Made by a program: the position numbers and the translations under genes. Under the pieces are notes generated by a model, which worked only from the letters and a program-made list of their open reading frames with translations, had not been told where the DNA came from and searched no databases. Positions 16,504-61,365 of a stretch of 64,000 nucleotides of DNA are shown piece after piece. Origin of the DNA: Felis catus (lineage: Eukaryota); NCBI RefSeq assembly GCF_018350175.1, contig NC_058384.1, positions 67,332,001-67,396,000 of the forward strand. Reading direction: 5' to 3'. Position 1 is the stretch's first letter. Each line of letters starts with the position of its first letter.

Positions 16504-17225
16504 NNNNNNNNNNNNNNNNNNNNNNNNNNNNNNNNNNNNNNNNNNNNNNNNNNNNNNNNNNNNNNNNNNNNNNNNNNNNNNNNNNNNNNNNNNNNNNNNN
16601 NNNNNNNNNNNNNNNNNNNNNNNNNNNNNNNNNNNNNNNNNNNNNNNNNNNNNNNNNNNNNNNNNNNNNNNNNNNNNNNNNNNNNNNNNNNNNNNNNNNN
16701 NNNNNNNNNNNNNNNNNNNNNNNNNNNNNNNNNNNNNNNNNNNNNNNNNNNNNNNNNNNNNNNNNNNNNNNNNNNNNNNNNNNNNNNNNNNNNNNNNNNN
16801 NNNNNNNNNNNNNNNNNNNNNNNNNNNNNNNNNNNNNNNNNNNNNNNNNNNNNNNNNNNNNNNNNNNNNNNNNNNNNNNNNNNNNNNNNNNNNNNNNNNN
16901 NNNNNNNNNNNNNNNNNNNNNNNNNNNNNNNNNNNNNNNNNNNNNNNNNNNNNNNNNNNNNNNNNNNNNNNNNNNNNNNNNNNNNNNNNNNNNNNNNNNN
17001 NNNNNNNNNNNNNNNNNNNNNNNNNNNNNNNNNNNNNNNNNNNNNNNNNNNNNNNNNNNNNNNNNNNNNNNNNNNNNNNNNNNNNNNNNNNNNNNNNNNN
17101 NNNNNNNNNNNNNNNNNNNNNNNNNNNNNNNNNNNNNNNNNNNNNNNNNNNNNNNNNNNNNNNNNNNNNNNNNNNNNNNNNNNNNNNNNNNNNNNNNNNN
17201 NNNNNNNNNNNNNNNNNNNNNNNNN
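16504..17225 (+). other. MEX3A: Assembly gap expected to contain MEX3A coding exon 1
   Basis: 722 N between the CpG island and intron-like sequence. Exon 2 begins in phase 1 inside KH1, so an upstream coding exon is required and is not visible elsewhere. Confidence 0.75.
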
Positions 17226-21909: not shown

Positions 21910-24900
21910 GCCCCCTGCCCCAGGCCTCCTGCGTCCCTCCCCAGGGGCCCGCCCTGGATCTGTTTTCCACCGGGGCCTTTTGGAAATCAGTGGTCTGAGG
22001 GGCAAGGTGCTTAGAGATACTCGCTCCGTGGGGAGGGGGAGGGGAGGCGATGGTGGCTGAGGAGGGGTAGGCCACTTTCAGAGCCTCTGGTCACCCCAGT
22101 CCTGGAATGGTGGGGAGGGGGCCAGGCAGGAGATTTTACTAGAGTTACAACTCTGATACCTCAACACACCCTTCAATCTGGAAGCAGCTAAGAGAAACTT
22201 TTGTTTTGCCGGAGGTGACCGTTAAGGCACCCTGACCCCCTCTGTCCACCTCCCCATCTGCATCACACTGCCCCTCCCTCTGCGGAGGGGATGGGGAAAG
22301 GGAGGGGGACAGGTTCCATCTGTATCTAGAGGTGCTCTTTCCAATCCTCAAGCCCTCTCTGGCCCTGACCTTTGACCTCCCAACATGACCCTTTAGACCC
22401 TCCACTGCCATATCCTGTTTGGGAATCTGTTCCTGGGTTTCCAATGGTACAAGGGGGTTGGGGCCCTTTCAGAAGTCTGCACAGATATTCCGGGCGGGGG
22501 GGGGTGGGGGGAAGCATGTCAATCTATAAAGGGCTCAGAGCTCATCTCCCCGACAGAGCTGGGTGCAGGGGTCTGGAGAGAGAGCTCCTCTCTGCCCCTC
22601 CGGCTCCCCGCCCCCACCTTCCCTCCATTGGGCTCTCCCTTCCCTTTACTGTTTCCACCGGCTCTCCTCTTCGCTTCCCCTTGATGGCTGCCCTTCCCAG
22701 CCCTGTCCTCCTCCCCTCTCTTCCCTTCTCCCCCTCCCTCCTGCCCCTTCTAGCCCAGCTTTGGGTTCACCACCTCCCCTGGGGAGAAATAGGGGAGAAG
22801 AGCATTTGGATGGACCCCCCCACCCCCATTTAATTCCTCTTCTGGCATTCGGAGGCCCTCCCCACTCCAAAGAAACACCTCTCATTCTTGATGGAATGTA
22901 TCCCCATTCTCAGTGACAATTTGAGGAGGGAACGAATACTGGGGTACATCAAGGGTCGAACCCCCGCCTCTACCGTCTTTGGGCATTGCATTTGGGGAGC
23001 GGTTCTCGGGCTGGATTTTCTAGCGGCCGGCAGTGGTGGAGAGCCAGGGTCGTGTGTGTGTCTGCTGTTCAAGGGGACAGGAAGGAGCCTGAGGCTGGTG
23101 GATGGAAGGGCCCCCCTCTCCCCCTGCAGCTCCCACCCCTGCGCCCCTCTCTGGGCCTTACCCGAACCCCTATCAGCGGGCGAATCATGAAGTCTCTGTC
23201 CCACCCATTGTGGCTGAGGAGAGAGGCTGGGTCTTCAGAGAGAGCTCAGTCCCAGGCCGGTCGGGATTGTGGTGCCGCAGGGCCCCATATTGCTAACAGG
23301 CCTTGCATCGCCCCTCCACTGCTTCCCTGAGGCTCACTTGGGGCTGCCACCAGCCTGCCACCCTCCTGGTTCCGCTGGCCGGGCCAGGAGAGGGTGGGGG
23401 ATGGGAGTCCCAGGAGATTCTTGTATATAGTGGGGTGGGACTCTTCCAAGTGATCTCTGAGCACTTAGCTCGGGAATCCCATTCTATCTGATGGAGAGGG
23501 AGTGCAGGGATGGACGTACAGGGGGGATTTCCTCCTCTCCTTCCTCCTGTTGTGAATTAACTCACCTCTCCTCGGCCTACCCCTCCAGACCACCAGCCAG
23601 GGAGGGGAGAGGAAGGAGGTCACAGTCAGGAAAACTGGCCGCTGACAACTTCCCTCCTTCCCGCCAATGTGAGCCATCCTGAGATGTCTGTACAATAGAA
23701 ACCAAACCAAATGGGCACCCCCGGTCGCCGAGGGGGGGTGGGGAGGGGGGTGGGAAGAAGGGATGTCTGTCTGTCGATCCCCCTCCCCCTCTCCACCTCT
23801 TACCCACAAAGGCAGAAGACTGTTACTCTAGGGGGCTCGGAAAATTCAATCCCACCCTTACTAATTGAGCCAAACCTAGAAACCAACGCAAAAACACATA
23901 GTGAGAGACAAAACAGAGGAGAGAAAGCGTGAGAGGGAGCGAGATAGNNNNNNNNNNNNNNNNNNNNNNNNNNNNNNNNNNNNNNNNNNNNNNNNNNNNN
24001 NNNNNNNNNNNNNNNNNNNNNNNNNNNNNNNNNNNNNNNNNNNNNNNNNNNNNNNNNNNNNNNNNNNNNNNNNNNNNNNNNNNNNNNNNNNNNNNNNNNN
24101 NNNNNNNNNNNNNNNNNNNNNNNNNNNNNNNNNNNNNNNNNNNNNNNNNNNNNNNNNNNNNNNNNNNNNNNNNNNNNNNNNNNNNNNNNNNNNNNNNNNN
24201 NNNNNNNNNNNNNNNNNNNNNNNNNNNNNNNNNNNNNNNNNNNNNNNNNNNNNNNNNNNNNNNNNNNNNNNNNNNNNNNNNNNNNNNNNCCTTTTTTCCC
24301 CCACTTTTTTTTGGGGAGGAATGTCATTTGCTTTTCGTGGGGAGCATCCTGGGATGTGTGGTGGAGACAGGGGCTGGGGGAACCTGGTCCTTCTGGGGCC
24401 CCACAAGTAGATTGGATTTCACTCCATGGGCCCCCTCCCCGCTCCCCTCCCCCTCGGGGGAGCTGGCAGAGCCAAACAAAGCAAGGGATTAACGAGAAAG
24501 GAAGACGCACTAGGACTGAGGATCCTGGGCTGCCCCCCCCCCTTCCCCTGCCCTGTCCCAGGGGCGAGTGAGGAGGGGGAAGTCCAGAGCTGAGGCCTTG
24601 CAGGCCTGCGGGAACCCTCAGAGAGNNNNNNNNNNNNNNNNNNNNNNNNNNNNNNNNNNNNNNNNNNNNNNNNNNNNNNNNNNNNNNNNNNNNNNNNNNN
24701 NNNNNNNNNNNNNNNNNNNNNNNNNNNNNNNNNNNNNNNNNNNNNNNNNNNNNNNNNNNNNNNNNNNNNNNNNNNNNNNNNNNNNNNNNNNNNNNNNNNN
24801 NNNNNNNNNNGAATTACTAGTTACTTAGTAGACAATATTCAGATAGCTTAAAGTTTAGTAGCATTGAGGGCCCCTGGGTCCAGTAGAATGTATAAAAGTT

Positions 24901-38184: not shown

Positions 38185-38362
38185 NNNNNNNNNNNNNNNN
38201 NNNNNNNNNNNNNNNNNNNNNNNNNNNNNNNNNNNNNNNNNNNNNNNNNNNNNNNNNNNNNNNNNNNNNNNNNNNNNNNNNNNNNNNNNNNNNNNNNNNN
38301 NNNNNNNNNNNNNNNNNNNNNNNNNNNNNNNNNNNNNNNNNNNNNNNNNNNNNNNNNNNNNN

Positions 38363-46488: not shown

Positions 46489-46796
46489 NNNNNNNNNNNN
46501 NNNNNNNNNNNNNNNNNNNNNNNNNNNNNNNNNNNNNNNNNNNNNNNNNNNNNNNNNNNNNNNNNNNNNNNNNNNNNNNNNNNNNNNNNNNNNNNNNNNN
46601 NNNNNNNNNNNNNNNNNNNNNNNNNNNNNNNNNNNNNNNNNNNNNNNNNNNNNNNNNNNNNNNNNNNNNNNNNNNNNNNNNNNNNNNNNNNNNNNNNNNN
46701 NNNNNNNNNNNNNNNNNNNNNNNNNNNNNNNNNNNNNNNNNNNNNNNNNNNNNNNNNNNNNNNNNNNNNNNNNNNNNNNNNNNNNNNNNNNNNNNN
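46489..46796 (+). other. UBQLN4: Assembly gap expected to contain UBQLN4 exon 6
   Basis: Exon 5 ends in phase 0 and exon 7 starts in phase 1, so an exon is missing. A T-rich tract (ggtttgtttcggtc) abuts the 308-N gap. Confidence 0.75.
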
Positions 46797-50648: not shown

Positions 50649-51619
50649 CCCCCCGGCCGTGCCTCCTGCCTCTCCCTTCCCTGGGCGCCAGCGCCTGGCT
50701 CCTCTGTTGGCCCCTGCCCTTTGCCTGCCGCCCCATCTCCCCGCCCCGTCCTCTCCAGACAGCAGGGTGACTTTAGGGGCACGGGCCTCGCCCCAGTGCC
50801 CTGCGCATTTTGGGTTTACTTGTACATCTCTTATGGAGTCTTTGCTCTGGGCCCTGCTCCAGCAGGGCCGTTCAAGTGGTTTTCACAGTGTCGCCGGTCG
50901 GCCCCAGCTCCTGGCCTCACCGCCTCCTGGCACAGCCTGTAGACCTCTGGTGGCGGTGGCGTGGCCATGCTGGGTGGGAGGAGGGACTGGGGCGGGGTCT
51001 TCGTGTGTGCCTCTAGGGCTCTGCTTGTTGTCTGGTTACTTGTGGCGACTCCTCTGTCTCTCTCTCCACCTGCAGCCTCACCCCTGCTGGGACCACACAC
51101 TGAAGCAGGGCTGGCGGTTGGGCGGGTGGGGACAGGCTCTCTTTTCCATCCCCCCCCGCCCCCCCCCATCCTGGTCCCTTAATCCAGGCTTTGTTGGGAT
51201 GTCCCGTCCGAAGGGGGAGACCAGACATCACCCTCTGTGTGAGGAACCGAGCCCTGGACCGGTCCGATGGAGTTGGGTGCAAAGGAGGGAGGAGATTTTC
51301 TGGAGGAGGGGGATGGGAAAACGAACTGAGTCACAGGCTCAGCGGCTGGAACCTGGAATGGACGCTTTGGGAGTGGAGGCCCCACGGAGCTCCCTTAGGC
51401 GGGGTCCAGGCTCAGGCCTGGCAGAGGGCCCTGGAGATGCTAACGGGGTCTGAGCCGCAGGAAGGGCTCAGGGAAGCCAAGCGACACGGTTCACGGGGGC
51501 TCCTGCCAGCTCCGTTTCCAGGACCCGCCTGCATCCCCAGGTACCGGGGTCTCAGTCCCCCTCACGAGACACGAAGGGATTGGGGTCTGTCTCAGCAGCG
51601 GGTGTGTATGCGGTGGGTA

Positions 51620-57712: not shown

Positions 57713-58941
57713 AGCTATTGTGAGGAAGAGACTTTGAAACTACGCAAATTTCCTGTTTCTCCTCAAATTTTCATCCGTAATTTCACCTCGATTGCCGGTC
57801 CCGCTGCAGCAGGGATCGCTCTGGTTTGAGCGCCGGTTTCCGACTTGTTCGTTGGTTGGTTGGTTGCAGTTTTTCTGGACGGAGGGCCGTCCTTTCTCCC
57901 TTATTTGTGTTTTTATTTTACGCACTTCGCCATGATGCACTTTGCTGTCATGCACGCGTGCGGCATTTACTGAAGGTAAATCTGTACTGGGAAATACCAC
58001 AGAGCTCAGTGATTGCTAGCGGTCGCTGTCTGGTCCCCGGGCAGATCCCGCGGCCGGCCAGCACCCACGCCCGGCTCCTTCGGGGCTGCCTGCTCACAGC
58101 TCGCAGCCAGTGACCCTGCATCAACCCAGAGCTGCCTTGCTGGGGAAGGTACACACCCCCCCCCCCAACGTCGGGCAGCCCGCAGTGCTGATATGCCTCA
58201 AAAGTGCTGCCAATCTTGTGGGCTGACTCTCGCGCCACAGCTCCCTAGACCCCGGCGGGCGGCGAGGAAGACTGAGAAGGCCATAGCCCTGCTCCGCCCT
58301 CTTTCTGCCCCGTCCTGCTTCCTCACGGCCTCCGCTTCTAGGGAACCTAGCCGAGGCGGGCTGTGTCTCCCCCGCCGCAGACGTGCCCTCTGGACCCTCA
58401 GCCTGCCGGGCAGGGGCAAGGTGGGGGGCTCTGGAGGGCCGGGCCCCTCTCCTGTTACTCGGGTGAGGAAGGAAGCCTGAGAGGCCAGGCTTGTTTAGCG
58501 GACGGCTGTCGTTAAGGCAGTCTTGTTTGCGAAACGCGAAGCCCAAAGCGTTGCTTTGAGCTGAGAGTCACTAGAAGAAGAGCAGAACTCTGGAGGGGAA
58601 ACCCTGTAGCAAGAGGGCTCCAGGTCAGTCCCCTCAGGCCTCCGGCCCCTTGCTGTCCTCCTTCTTGGAGCTCCAGTCCTTCCAGGGTTTCAAAAGCCTC
58701 GTCACCTCTCCCGAGGCCTCTGCATTAGAGACAGAAATTCAGACGGAGCTGGAAAGGGTGAGAAAGTGTTCAGAGACACGGGGATTGGGGGGGGGGGGGA
58801 GGTGGGGAGGAAGAAAGAGGATGCGCGTTCTCCCCAATCCGTCCATCCATCCGTCCGTCCGTCCGTCCATCATGCAGTCCATCTAGAGACAAACCTGCAA
58901 TCATCAGGCTAGGACCTTCCGGGCCCCAAAATAAACTCTGC

Positions 58942-58947
58942 TTTATT
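58942..58947 (-). terminator. Polyadenylation signal of the uncharacterised gene
   Basis: AATAAA on -, about 180 nt after the TAG, at the edge of the CpG-rich exon. Confidence 0.65.
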
Positions 58948-59127
58948 TACATGGGAGCCGGATGATCCTGTCCGTCCTCCTGGTCCCTGGGCGCGCTCCC
59001 GGGAGCCTCTTGCGTGCGGTGCTCGCTGGCGGGGCCGGGCCGGGGCCGGGGCCGGGGTCGAGCCCTCCCCGGGGGGCTCGCCCGCGCCCCCGGCCTCCCC
59101 CGCCGCCTCGGCCTCGGCGCCCGCCCC

Positions 59128-59527
59128 CTACCGCCGCCGCCGGTCGCAGCAGCTGCACAGGTACCGGCCGAAGCCGGCCAGGCTCCAGCGGGACGACTTG
59201 CTCTTGGACGTGAGCGTGCTCGGGCTGCTTTCCGAGCTGCCCGGGTGCTCCTGCCGCAGCGGGCGCGTCCGCGAGGACGGGTGGCGCTTCCGCCGCACCC
59301 TCGGGGACCGCGCGGCCCGGGGCGGCCCCTCGTTCTCGGCGTCCTCGTCCTCCTCGTCCGCGTCCTCGTCCTTCGCCTTGTCCCTCCTCGGCCGGACGGT
59401 GGCGACCTTGCTGCGCTTCCGCCTCTTGGACCGAGCGAGGCCGGGGTCTTCCTCCTTGGGGAATCCGAGAGCAGGGGATGAAGCGCGCTCTCCACTGACC
59501 CGTCCCGTTACATACGGGGCTTCGTGT
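59128..59527 (-). CDS. Terminal coding exon of an uncharacterised gene (basic NLS-like motif, acidic tract, Cys-Arg C-terminus)
   Basis: Acceptor cttctctgcctcccttcccccctcag|A CAC GAA. Frame (not in the ORF track): HEAPYVTGRVSGERASSPALGFPKEEDPGLARSKRRKRSKVATVRPRRDKAKDEDADEEDEDAENEGPPRAARSPRVRRKRHPSSRTRPLRQEHPGSSESSPSTLTSKSKSSRWSLAGFGRYLCSCCDRRRR-TAG. 107 of the last 110 sense codons end in G/C. Confidence 0.75.
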
Positions 59528-59629
59528 CTGAGGGGGGAAGGGAGGCAGAGAAGCCCTGAGGTCAGAGGCGAGCCTGGACCGCGGGCGTCGGCGGAAGCCT
59601 GCCCCCCGGTGGACGCTCCCGGACCTCAC

Positions 59630-59712
59630 CGCAGGCTTATCCCAGCGCGAGGTGGACAGCTGGCCTCTTTCCAAGGGTCCCAGGGCAGGTGCCTTCGTTT
59701 CATACAGACCCA
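59630..59712 (-). CDS. Internal exon of the uncharacterised gene
   Basis: tgccttccatag|TGG GTC TGT ATG...CTG CG|gtgagg. 83 nt, phase 0 to 2, WVCMKRRHLPWDPWKEASCPPRAGISL(R). Joins the terminal exon in the GC3-rich frame. Confidence 0.65.
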
Positions 59713-59883
59713 CTATGGAAGGCAGATACCAGCCGTCTAAGGACTCTGCTCTGGACCCCCTGGCTGCTCACACTTGGTGGGGGGGGGGGGGACGGATACG
59801 TCTATTATCTTGATTGTGGCGATGGTTTCACGAGTACGTACACGTCCGCACACCAAACGGTGCACTTTCAATGTGAGCAGCTT

Positions 59884-60045
59884 GGGGCGCCTGGGTGGTT
59901 CGGTCGGTGAAGTGTCCCACTCTTGATTGCGGCTCAGGTCATGGTCTCAGGGTTAGTGAGATCAAGCCCCACGTGGGCTCTGCGCTGACAGCCTGCTTGG
60001 GAGTCTCTCCGTCTCTGCCCCTCTCCCCACTCTCTCTCTTAAAAA
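59884..60045 (+). mobile_element. Can-SINE (in a predicted intron of the uncharacterised gene)
   Basis: GGGGCGCCTGGGTGG head and CT tract. Confidence 0.88.
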
Positions 60046-60581
60046 TTAGCATTTAAATATGAGCAATGTATTGTGTCAGTCACTGCTAACAGAAACTAGC
60101 ATTTAAAGCCTCTCTCAAATAAACCAAGAGCTAAGTTCCTATACCGAGTGCGTTGCGCGGCACGTAAATGTTGGCCGCCAGTGGGGGAGGCGGTTCTGTG
60201 TGATACCTCGGCTCAGACACACAGCTCAGACCCTAGCGTCTCTGCCTCCTGTTTATCCGATCTTGGGAGGGTCACTTAACTTGACTTTGCCTCCGTTTCC
60301 TCGTCTGAAAAATAGGGATAATAATAATATCTACCTGATAGGGAGGCAGTGGGAAGTTCTCAGTAAGTAGAAGCTGCAGTTACTCTCAGTGTTGGTGTTT
60401 TGTTCCGGAAGGAGTAAATCTGAGCCGTGTTTAGTAAAGATGTGAATTGGAAGGGTGTCGAGAAGATATGGGAGGTTGCCGCAAGACCTCCTAGAGGAGG
60501 TCAGTGAGGTAAGTTGCCAGTGTGGTACGGGGCAAGGGGTGCGGGACCCCAGGGGAGGGGGGCCCGGGGTGGGGTACTCAC

Positions 60582-60710
60582 GCTGGTCAGCTCCTGGCTC
60601 CCTTGGTAGCCCACATCATCTGTGAGGTTGTAGATGGATGTCAAGGATACATCAAAGGTGCTTAAGGAGGGATCTTCTGCCCCTGCAGCTCCCCCAGCTT
60701 CTCTGGCCTC
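60582..60710 (-). CDS. Internal exon of the uncharacterised gene
   Basis: Branch point ctaac, then ggcttctccttctctcctcag|GAG...AGC|gtgagt. 129 nt, phase 0-0, EAREAGGAAGAEDPSLSTFDVSLTSIYNLTDDVGYQGSQELTS. Confidence 0.72.
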
Positions 60711-60753
60711 CTGAGGAGAGAAGGAGAAGCCAGTTAGGAGGCCGAAGCTCTCG

Positions 60754-60910
60754 GGGCGCCTGGGGGGCCCAGTCGGTTAAGCGTCCACCTCTTGGTTTCC
60801 GCTAAGGTCGTGATCTCACGGTTCGTGAGTTTGAGCCTCGAGTCTGGCTCTGTGCCGACGGCTCAGAGCCTGAATGGGATTCTCGCTCTCTCTCTCTCTC
60901 TGCCCCCCAA
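60754..60910 (+). mobile_element. Can-SINE (in a predicted intron of the uncharacterised gene)
   Basis: GGGGCGCCTGGGGGGCCCAGTCGGTTAAGCGTCC head and (CT)n. Confidence 0.85.
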
Positions 60911-61018
60911 CTTTTTTTTTTTTTTTTTTTTTACAAAAAAGAGGGAGTAGCTCACAGCAGGCAGGACTGCCAGGATCAGCCGTCCTGGCTCCTGCCTCTG
61001 CCCCAGCCTGCCCCTTAC

Positions 61019-61072
61019 TTTGGGGTTGGAAGATAAGGACACGTGTTCTTTCTTCTTCATGATCATAAAGTT
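61019..61072 (-). CDS. Candidate exon of the uncharacterised gene
   Basis: cgcag|AAC TTT ATG...CCC AAA|gtaagg. 54 nt, phase 0-0, NFMIMKKKEHVSLSSNPK. Weak polypyrimidine tract. Confidence 0.5.
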
Positions 61073-61155
61073 CTGCGATCACTGATGTGATGAGGCTCTG
61101 GCGTGTCCGCGCCCCCCCCCCCACACCCACAATTCTTTAGTGTTCATGTCCTCAC

Positions 61156-61218
61156 AGAAGTGGTTGTCGTGGCAATGGGAGGGTGGGGTCCGGGCCCCTG
61201 GGGGTCCCGGGAGGGCTC
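61156..61218 (-). CDS. Candidate exon of the uncharacterised gene
   Basis: cctcacag|GAG CCC...TCT|gtgagg. 63 nt, phase 0-0, EPSRDPQGPGPHPPIATTTTS. 83-nt downstream intron. Confidence 0.42.
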
Positions 61219-61299
61219 CTGTGAGGTGCTGAGACAGCACCCTTGCACACACACAGACCCCTACTTCACTTCTCAGCGGGAGGGGGCTGCAGGCCTCAC

Positions 61300-61365
61300 T
61301 CCCCAACCCCCACCACGGTGAGCAGGAGGAGGACTGGCCTTAGGGAGGGAGACTGCGGTCGAAAC
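61300..61365 (-). CDS. Candidate exon of the uncharacterised gene (donor ambiguous: 61314 or 61300)
   Basis: Strong acceptor ctatcctattttcag|G. Reads either FRPQSPSLRPVLLLLTV|gtgggg or VSTAVSLPKASPPPAHRGGGWG|gtgagg, and both end in phase 0. Confidence 0.35.

What the first reader, a model, noticed from the sequence alone, without database searches (positions are those of the whole stretch)
58942..61365. Hidden multi-exon protein-coding gene on the minus strand, downstream of and convergent with UBQLN4
Seen in sequence: GT-AG exons at 60710-60582 (129 nt, with a ctaac branch point and a long pyrimidine tract), 59712-59630 (83 nt) and 59527-59128 splice in phase 0/0, 0/2 and 2/stop into one open 203-aa frame. 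The ORF track misses this frame because the exons lack their own long ORF. In that frame 107 of the last 110 codons end in G/C, a strong coding signature. An AATAAA follows the stop, and the SINEs here fall only in the predicted introns. Phase-compatible upstream exons at 61072-61019, 61218-61156 and 61365-61314/61300 extend it to more than 240 aa. Established: in human this interval lies between UBQLN4 and SSR2, where I know of no named protein-coding gene. Inference: this is an uncharacterised gene, perhaps retained in carnivores and lost or unannotated in primates and rodents. It may be transcribed head-to-head from the SSR2 promoter beyond the window edge.
Basis: partly seen in the sequence, partly recalled or inferred. 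Interest (0 to 1): 0.9.

Follow-up and report, generated by a model that had tools for sequence, protein, structure and literature searches.

The report
Known uncharacterised gene beside cat UBQLN4
The predicted exons are real, but they form a cat gene that NCBI already lists as uncharacterised LOC102901020. It belongs to an unnamed family found across placental mammals and switched on in developing sperm cells of a lemur, so it is genuine but neither hidden nor new.

Summary
So the gene is real but already annotated.

It is not carnivore-specific. Searches found unnamed orthologues in carnivores, horse, rhinoceros, ruminants, camel, whales, bats, armadillo, anteater, treeshrew, lemurs and a tamarin. 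None was named from catarrhines or rodents.

All orthologues map to three cat coding pieces: 61066-61019, 60710-60582 and 59454-59128, a 167-aa core. The 83-nt exon and the 59527 acceptor belong only to alternative cat isoforms. The proposed upstream extension has no support.

G+C by codon position in the core last exon is 0.64/0.63/0.97 and flat outside it.

The protein has no Pfam, PDB or Atlas match. It is predicted disordered except for one helix carrying an invariant Cys cluster.

The mouse-lemur orthologue is a published top differentially expressed gene along spermatogenesis.

Feliform copies are G+C-shifted. In cat, Prionailurus, Panthera and Puma models the ancestral C-terminal tail is cut off by an early stop.

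The parts
61019..61072 (-). First coding exon (exon A). The ATG is at 61066-61064, it encodes 16 aa beginning MIMKKK, and the donor GT follows 61019.
   Evidence: The start is conserved in whale, horse, cattle, anteater, hyena and fox models. tblastn maps the orthologues to 61066-61019.
60956..61018 (-). Alternative extension of exon A, adding 21 aa. It uses a second donor (GT at 60955-60954) and is found in cat isoforms X1 and X3.
   Evidence: P0004 and P0006, read against the sequence. It is not conserved in other orders.
60582..60710 (-). Coding exon B, 43 codons, phase 0/0. This is the conserved N-terminal block with the invariant G-Y and the near-invariant DD..Q.S around it.
   Evidence: All 15 orthologues map here. 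It is aligned without gaps as 43 residues in 16 of 18 models; in 16 of 18 it joins directly to the acidic junction.
59630..59712 (-). 83-nt cassette exon used only in cat isoforms X1 and X2.
   Evidence: It has GT-AG borders. No orthologue from any other order maps to it. It keeps the frame only together with the 73-nt extension below (83+73 = 156 nt).
59455..59527 (-). Alternative 5' extension of the last exon (upstream acceptor at 59527).
   Evidence: It shows no third-position G+C excess (0.71/0.62/0.54). Joined directly to exon B it gives the out-of-frame models named 'IF-2-like' (P0015, P0026).
59128..59454 (-). Conserved last coding exon: acceptor at 59454, 108 codons, stop TAG at 59130-59128. 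It carries a basic cluster, an acidic run, a second basic cluster, and a helix with the C-x-C-C motif.
   Evidence: 10 of 15 orthologue alignments start exactly at 59454; G+C 0.64/0.63/0.97; helix.
58942..59127 (-). 3' UTR. It holds the decayed remnant of the ancestral C-terminal tail, with the ancestral stop TAA at 58949-58947 overlapping AATAAA at 58947-58942.
   Evidence: The Hyaena and Leopardus models read on to an end homologous to the tail end of horse, cattle and bat proteins. In cat that last piece lies in another frame, and there is no codon periodicity.

Best explanation
This is the domestic-cat copy of an unnamed, eutherian-wide protein-coding gene, RefSeq LOC102901020. It lies tail-to-tail with UBQLN4.

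Shown: the conserved coding sequence has three exons (61066-61019, 60710-60582, 59454-59128) and encodes 167 aa.

Shown: the protein is strongly charged (about 21% K+R and 15% D+E) and is predicted disordered. It has a conserved acidic Ser/Thr-rich N-terminal block, a K-R-x-K basic cluster, an acidic run and a second basic cluster. It also has one predicted amphipathic helix ending in an invariant Cys pair within C-x-C-C, followed by basic residues.

Shown only for an orthologue: the gene is dynamically expressed along spermatogenesis in mouse lemur.

Inferred from amino-acid composition: in feliforms the last exon sits in an 80% G+C island and has been pushed towards G/A/R/P codons.

Shown: in the cat, Prionailurus, Panthera and Puma models an early TAG removes the ancestral tail of about 55-60 aa. 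The Leopardus models read through that position.

Inferred mechanism, which I hold at about 35-40%: the protein is a small disordered adaptor of male germ cells. It would be tethered to membranes by S-acylation of the C-x-C-C cluster together with the adjacent basic residues. The N-terminal acidic block would act as a phosphorylatable docking motif. A nuclear or chromatin role through the basic clusters is the main alternative, at about 30%.

The confidence given is for the identity and gene status, not for the mechanism.
For: The last exon searched by reference hit the cat RefSeq protein at 100% identity.

An exhaustive phmmer search found 28 relatives, 19 of them at E<=1e-10. Named orthologues span Carnivora, Perissodactyla, Cetartiodactyla, Chiroptera, Xenarthra, Scandentia and Primates.

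Alignments A1 and A2 show invariant residues (G-Y, K, and C-C; the neighbouring R is near-invariant in A2). Exon B is aligned without gaps as 43 residues in 16 of 18 models, and exon B joins directly to the acidic junction in 16 of 18 models. tblastn places every orthologue on the same three cat exons, one frame each.

Codon-position G+C is 0.64/0.63/0.97 inside the conserved last exon only, p = 5e-13.

AlphaFold2 on the 18-sequence alignment gave mean pLDDT 52 and a single helix over the W-S-L-A...C-S-C-C stretch, with pLDDT about 78.

Microcebus LOC105873147 appears as '[uncharacterized 2]' among the top differentially expressed genes of the spermatogenesis trajectory, in the source sheet of Extended Data Fig. 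2c of PMC12328211. Rows there are ordered by position of peak expression, and this row is 13th from the end.

The G/A/R/P fraction of the C block is 0.38-0.50 in feliforms and 0.47 in Mustela, against 0.15-0.29 in the other species.
Against: No cat RNA was seen. The 14 small contig runs that hold the last exon are only guessed to be RNA.

No DNA of other species could be fetched, so dN/dS was not computed. The argument for constraint rests on protein alignments of automatic gene models, which may favour open frames.

The cat copy lacks the conserved tail. It also carries G in place of a widely conserved W in exon B. Both could mean relaxed constraint in felids.

The functional reading has no experimental or homology support: Pfam, NCBIfam, PDB and the Atlas all gave nothing. 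The likeness of the Cys-basic motif to known S-acylation signals comes from memory and was not tested.
Confidence: 0.84

Rival explanations
1. The family is a real gene in other mammals, but the felid copy is under relaxed constraint or on its way to becoming a pseudogene. The open frame would persist only because an 80% G+C exon rarely acquires stop codons.
For: An early TAG at 59130-59128 removes the conserved tail. A frameshift further down separates the remnant from the ancestral stop. Amino-acid composition has shifted strongly towards G/A/R/P. Cat has G for a widely conserved W, and G for the R of other felids. All three frames of the last exon are nearly stop-free. Several carnivore models use a competing acceptor that gives an out-of-frame product (P0015, P0026).
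Against: The core frame is intact in Felis, two Prionailurus species, Leopardus, Panthera onca and Puma. Third-position G+C is 0.97 while positions 1 and 2 stay at 0.63-0.64, whereas the adjacent non-coding tail is 0.80-0.86 at all positions. This shows that positions 1 and 2 have resisted the G+C drive. Only 6 of 167 residues differ between cat and jaguar. The invariant family residues are kept.
Confidence: 0.1
2. There is no protein here. The frame would be a chance ORF in a CpG island carried on a non-coding transcript, and the gene models would be annotation artefacts copied between species.
For: The island has 73% G+C with CpG observed/expected 0.95, and long ORFs occur in every frame. 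All records are automatic predictions. No literature exists on the cat gene.
Against: Exon B and exon A are not G+C-rich, yet they are conserved in sequence, length and splice borders from armadillo to cat. Codon periodicity is confined to the conserved coding part. Models come from independent pipelines and submitters. The lemur orthologue is transcribed in germ cells.
Confidence: 0.03
3. One reading: a previously unannotated gene of more than 240 aa with further coding exons at 61218-61156 and 61365-61314. It would be retained mainly in carnivores and driven by the SSR2 promoter.
For: The donor at 61156 is used in one Prionailurus iriomotensis model, which starts M-T-T-T-S there (P0002). The upstream pieces are open in frame.
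Against: Cat has ACG where that model has its ATG. The M-I-M-K-K start in exon A is conserved across orders. No orthologue maps upstream of 61066, except ORFs from genomic DNA that run on unspliced from the upstream sequence. The gene is already in RefSeq and is widespread.
Confidence: 0.03

Closest known systems
RefSeq gene LOC102901020 of Felis catus (XP_044904871.1, XP_044904872.1, XP_044904873.1)
   Same: It is the same locus.
   Different: Nothing differs. The record has no name, function or literature.
Microcebus murinus LOC105873147, '[uncharacterized 2]' in the mouse-lemur cell atlas (PMC12328211)
   Same: It is an orthologue with the same three blocks, 42-47% identical to the felid proteins. 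It is the only member with published expression data, in male germ cells.
   Different: It keeps the ancestral motif after the Cys cluster, which the cat has lost, and its composition is not G+C-shifted.
SNAPC2 / SNAP45 (suggested in note s1-818912 for exon 60710-60582)
   Same: Only a resemblance noted by eye.
   Different: No SNAPC2 or any other Pfam family matched exon B or any of 10 full-length family members at E<=1.
PRRC2A and translation initiation factor IF-2 (automatic names of some felid and seal models)
   Same: Only a low-complexity, charged or Gly/Arg/Pro-rich composition.
   Different: There is no Pfam domain of either family. The 'IF-2-like' models are the wrong reading frame of the same last exon (P0015, P0026).
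Cysteine-plus-basic membrane anchors such as the N-terminus of GAP-43 (recalled from memory, a lead only)
   Same: A Cys pair next to Arg/Lys residues and a following V-E-x-N stretch in the non-carnivore orthologues.
   Different: Here the motif is near the C-terminus at the end of a predicted helix. No sequence comparison or assay was done.

Membership tests
RefSeq LOC102901020 (cat) | Same exons and same protein sequence | tested here: met
   100% identity over the last exon. The joined exons equal P0001 exactly.
Unnamed eutherian family (LOC102901020 / LOC105873147 / LOC102490643 and others) | N-terminal block of 43 residues on one phase-0/0 exon, with the D-D-x-G-Y-Q-G-S core | tested here: met
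Unnamed eutherian family | Last exon entered at the acidic E-E-D junction, followed by K-R-x-K, an acidic run, S-P-R and the helix with C-x-C-C | tested here: met
   The acceptor at 59454 is used in cat X3, jaguar, Leopardus and most other orders.
Unnamed eutherian family | C-terminal tail after the Cys cluster (Q-K-S-V-E-E-N-K-A ... C-N-P-S-A-C-K) | tested here: not met
   Cat stops four Arg residues after C-S-C-C-D, and the remnant lies in the 3' UTR, partly in another frame. The motif is diverged in all carnivore models aligned.
Unnamed eutherian family | Position next to UBQLN4 in other species | tested here: inconclusive
   The only evidence is a chimeric Puma model that fuses UBQLN4 and this gene.
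Expressed protein-coding gene (cat) | Spliced transcripts across the predicted junctions | not testable with these tools
The runs holding the exon are only guessed to be RNA.
SNAPC2 | Match to the Pfam SNAPC2 family | tested here: not met
   No hit at E<=1.
PRRC2A | A domain of the PRRC2/BAT2 family | tested here: not met
   No Pfam hit at E<=1 for the 10 aligned family members; the two Leopardus models that carry the name (P0003, P0007) were not themselves scanned, and the three felid members that were gave nothing.

The most novel reading that the evidence does not exclude
An ancient placental-mammal gene of male germ cells has escaped study because neither human nor mouse annotation carries it. 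It would encode a disordered protein anchored by an acylated or metal-binding C-x-C-C helix. In feliforms and mustelids it would be undergoing remodelling by G+C-biased substitution, with loss of its tail in several cats. That would make it a natural experiment on which parts of the protein are essential.
Probability: 0.4. Interest if true: 0.45.

Novelty: already known. Interest (0 to 1): 0.28.

Why it matters
It also shows that 'not known to me in human' is not the same as unannotated.

Biologically the gene is one of the unnamed LOC genes conserved across placental orders, yet no catarrhine or rodent model turned up in the searches. Such genes are never studied, although they may matter for male fertility in livestock, companion animals and wildlife.

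The family description given here is a starting point for anyone who wants to name and test it. It covers the three-exon core, the invariant motifs, the single helix with a Cys cluster, the germ-cell expression of the lemur orthologue, and the G+C-driven divergence and tail loss in cats.

Tried and rejected
RNA evidence:
- The look-up of sequencing runs listed 14 small contig runs holding 71-95% of the words of the last exon. None is on record as RNA, so I do not count this as evidence of expression.

Genomic context:
I therefore had no DNA of other species, no dN/dS and no synteny beyond the Puma chimera.

Homology searches that gave nothing:
- Pfam on the exons and on 10 family members.
- NCBIfam.
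- A PDB profile search at E<=10.
- ESM Atlas, best score 0.81, below any useful level.
- I did not run a fold search, because the model is low-confidence.

Literature:
- No paper mentions the cat locus or 11 of the 12 orthologue LOC ids tried in the two further searches.

Ideas rejected:
- SNAPC2 kinship of exon B.
- PRRC2A or IF-2 kinship.
- The upstream coding extension.

Left alone:
- An unnamed 95-aa ORF cluster from Logan assemblies (P0033) resembles the tamarin protein and ends early. Its organism is unknown and it could be an anthropoid primate, so I did not pursue it.

Joined model:
- No self-joined spliced model was sent to any search. I searched the last exon by reference and scanned exon B and the 83-nt exon against Pfam by reference. 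Full-length searches used the public record P0001 by its id. The exons were joined only inside one script, to compare them with P0001.
Full report
**What is in the sequence**

- Acceptors follow AG, after pyrimidine tracts at 60710 and 59527: cgcag|61072, cctcag|60710, ccatag|59712, cctcag|59527.
- Donors are GTAAGG, GTGAGT and GTGAGG.
- A ctaac lies about 27 nt before 60710, and AATAAA is at 58947-58942.
- The pieces translate without stops in the stated phases.
- 107 of the last 110 codons end in G or C.

**Identity**

I searched the last exon by reference. It hit [quoted passage not shown] at 100% identity, along with models from Prionailurus iriomotensis and Leopardus geoffroyi.

The cluster look-up gave three cat RefSeq isoforms:
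- X1, XP_044904871.1, 240 aa.
- X2, XP_044904872.1, 219 aa.
- X3, XP_044904873.1, 188 aa.

It also gave a Panthera onca protein of 167 aa.

So the window is domestic cat and the "hidden" gene is already in RefSeq. No self-joined model was sent to any search. Full-length searches used the public record by its id.

**Which exons are the gene proper**

The isoforms differ as follows:
- X1 and X3 extend the first coding exon by 63 nt to a second donor (60956).
- X3, the jaguar protein and the Leopardus models join 60582 directly to an internal acceptor at 59454.
- X1 and X2 instead insert the 83-nt exon and enter the last exon at 59527. Because 83 + 73 = 156 nt, this adds 52 residues in frame.

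tblastn of 15 orthologues from seven orders against the window placed every one on 61066-61019, 60710-60582 and 59454-about 59128, in one frame each.
- Ten alignments begin exactly at 59454.
- None touches 59712-59630.

Codon-position G+C tells the same story:

| Stretch | G+C at codon positions 1/2/3 |
|---|---|
| 59454-59131 (conserved last exon) | 0.64 / 0.63 / 0.97 (Fisher p = 5e-13) |
| 59526-59455 (alternative extension) | 0.71 / 0.62 / 0.54 |
| 3' UTR after the stop | 0.80-0.86 at every position in every frame |

The conserved coding sequence is thus 167 codons in three exons.

Joining exon B directly to 59527 gives the out-of-frame products that pipelines have named "translation initiation factor IF-2-like" in Prionailurus bengalensis and grey seal. 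This is possible because the exon is nearly stop-free in all frames.

**The upstream extension**

The start M-I-M-K-K in exon A is shared by whale, horse, cattle, anteater, hyena and fox models. No orthologue maps upstream of 61066, apart from unspliced read-through ORFs. That exon may therefore be an alternative 5' exon, but it is not a conserved coding extension.

**Distribution**

An exhaustive phmmer search of 1.84 billion representatives found 28 relatives at E<=0.001, 19 of them at E<=1e-10. A profile search of the 5.8-billion-protein set found 31.

Names attached to these hits:

| Order | Taxa named |
|---|---|
| Carnivora | Felidae, Hyaena, Vulpes, Nyctereutes, Canis aureus, Mustela, Gulo, seals and sea lion |
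| Perissodactyla | Equus, Diceros |
| Cetartiodactyla | Bos, Rangifer, Ovis, Camelus, Balaenoptera, Megaptera |
| Chiroptera | Pteropus, Rhinolophus |
| Xenarthra | Dasypus, Tamandua |
| Scandentia | Tupaia |
| Primates | Microcebus, Lemur, Saguinus |

All are "uncharacterized" or "hypothetical". No hit carries a catarrhine, rodent, lagomorph, afrothere or marsupial name. This is compatible with loss or non-annotation there, but those genomes were not examined.

A Puma model named "ubiquilin-4" is a chimera of UBQLN4 exons and this gene. It shows the same neighbourhood in Puma, and it let me place UBQLN4 on the + strand at 39.8-43.1 kb of the window. The ORF list suggests that UBQLN4's coding end lies near 50.6 kb; I did not confirm that with a search.

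**Evidence that it codes**

- Exon B is aligned without gaps as 43 residues in 16 of 18 aligned models; it is 49-79% identical across the compared models (from 51% between orders, e.g. jaguar and armadillo).
- The junction to the acidic E-E-D start of the last exon is direct in 16 of 18 models.
- G-Y, K and the C-C pair are invariant.
- In cat, positions 1 and 2 of the last exon have resisted a G+C drive that took third positions to 97% and the adjoining non-coding tail to more than 80% at all positions.

**Expression**

I sent nothing from those places to any search afterwards. Fourteen small contig runs hold most of the last exon, but they are only guessed to be RNA. I therefore claim no cat expression evidence.

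For the mouse-lemur orthologue LOC105873147 there is published evidence. It is "[uncharacterized 2]" among the top differentially expressed genes along the spermatogenesis trajectory, in the source sheet of Extended Data Fig. 2c of PMC12328211. It was detected in 7 of the first 49 spermatogonia. Its row is 13th from the end of a list ordered by position of peak expression, among spermatid-type genes such as LRRIQ4, PPM1J and HOOK1. The columns beyond the first 49 cells are cut, so the exact stage cannot be read.

**The protein**

No match appeared in Pfam, NCBIfam, the PDB or the ESM Atlas.

The cat and jaguar forms have pI about 10, with 21-22% K+R, 15-16% D+E and 24-26% S+T+P.

AlphaFold2 on the 18-sequence alignment (horse protein first) gave mean pLDDT 52 and pTM 0.18. 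The single helix covers residues 150-173, the W-S-L-A...Y-L-C-S-C-C-basic stretch, with pLDDT about 78.

My reading of the mechanism is inferred, not shown. I take it for a disordered adaptor of male germ cells held at membranes by S-acylation of the Cys cluster next to basic residues (about 35-40%). Alternatively, it is a nuclear protein using its basic clusters (about 30%).

The cat protein ends right after C-S-C-C-D-R-R-R-R. The Cys-basic element is thus what survives truncation, which fits its being the essential part.

**Lineage-specific change**

Non-carnivore proteins continue for about 55-60 residues after the Cys cluster. They carry a conserved Q-K-S-V-E-E-N-K-A stretch and an end C-N-P-S-A-C-K.
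- Hyaena and Leopardus models read through to an end that is homologous to it.
- Cat, Prionailurus, Panthera and Puma models stop at the TAG.
- In cat the last piece of the remnant lies in another frame.
- The ancestral TAA overlaps the AATAAA.

The G/A/R/P share of the C block is 0.38-0.50 in feliforms and 0.47 in Mustela, against 0.15-0.29 elsewhere. I read this as G+C-biased substitution acting on a constrained exon. Relaxed constraint in cats is the main rival (about 10%).

**Verdict**

It is wrong on novelty, on taxonomic range and on the upstream extension.

The finding is an already annotated gene of an unstudied family, so interest is modest.

Noticed in passing
window 50831-50968 (minus strand) and about 59280: An older cat model kept in UniParc (P0005, 215 aa) leaves the last exon after ...R-K-R-H-P and ends in 45 residues encoded on the minus strand at about 50.83-50.97 kb. 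That is antisense to the region just beyond the stretch that, by the ORF list, looks like the end of UBQLN4's coding sequence. Some transcripts may therefore run past the poly(A) site and overlap UBQLN4 tail-to-tail.
   Followed up: partly
Puma concolor protein P0056: The record named 'ubiquilin-4' (398 aa) is a chimera of UBQLN4 N-terminal exons and exons B and C of this convergent gene. It is an annotation error in a public record.
   Followed up: partly
window 59130-59128 versus Leopardus models P0003 and P0007: Leopardus has Lys where cat, Prionailurus, Panthera and Puma models end, and it reads in frame to the ancestral stop. Given the accepted cat phylogeny, this needs a reversal, parallel stops or lineage sorting. 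It cannot be resolved without DNA.
   Followed up: no
window 58830-58875 (minus strand): A (GGAC/GGAT)n microsatellite lies just downstream of the poly(A) signal.
   Followed up: no
window 58000-58600: A second G+C-rich stretch (0.60-0.68) lies between the gene's 3' end and UBQLN4's side, with long ORFs in several frames. I did not examine what it is.
   Followed up: no
I left them alone and sent them to no search afterwards.
   Followed up: no
window 16504-17225, 23948-24289, 24626-24810, 38185-38362, 46489-46796: Five runs of N, 1735 bases in all. They were left as they are.
   Followed up: no
proteins P0033 and P0069-P0071 (Logan assemblies): A cluster of 92-96-aa ORFs resembles the tamarin orthologue and ends early, after ...K-E-H-L-S-T. 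The organism is not given and may be an anthropoid primate with a broken copy. I did not pursue it.
   Followed up: no
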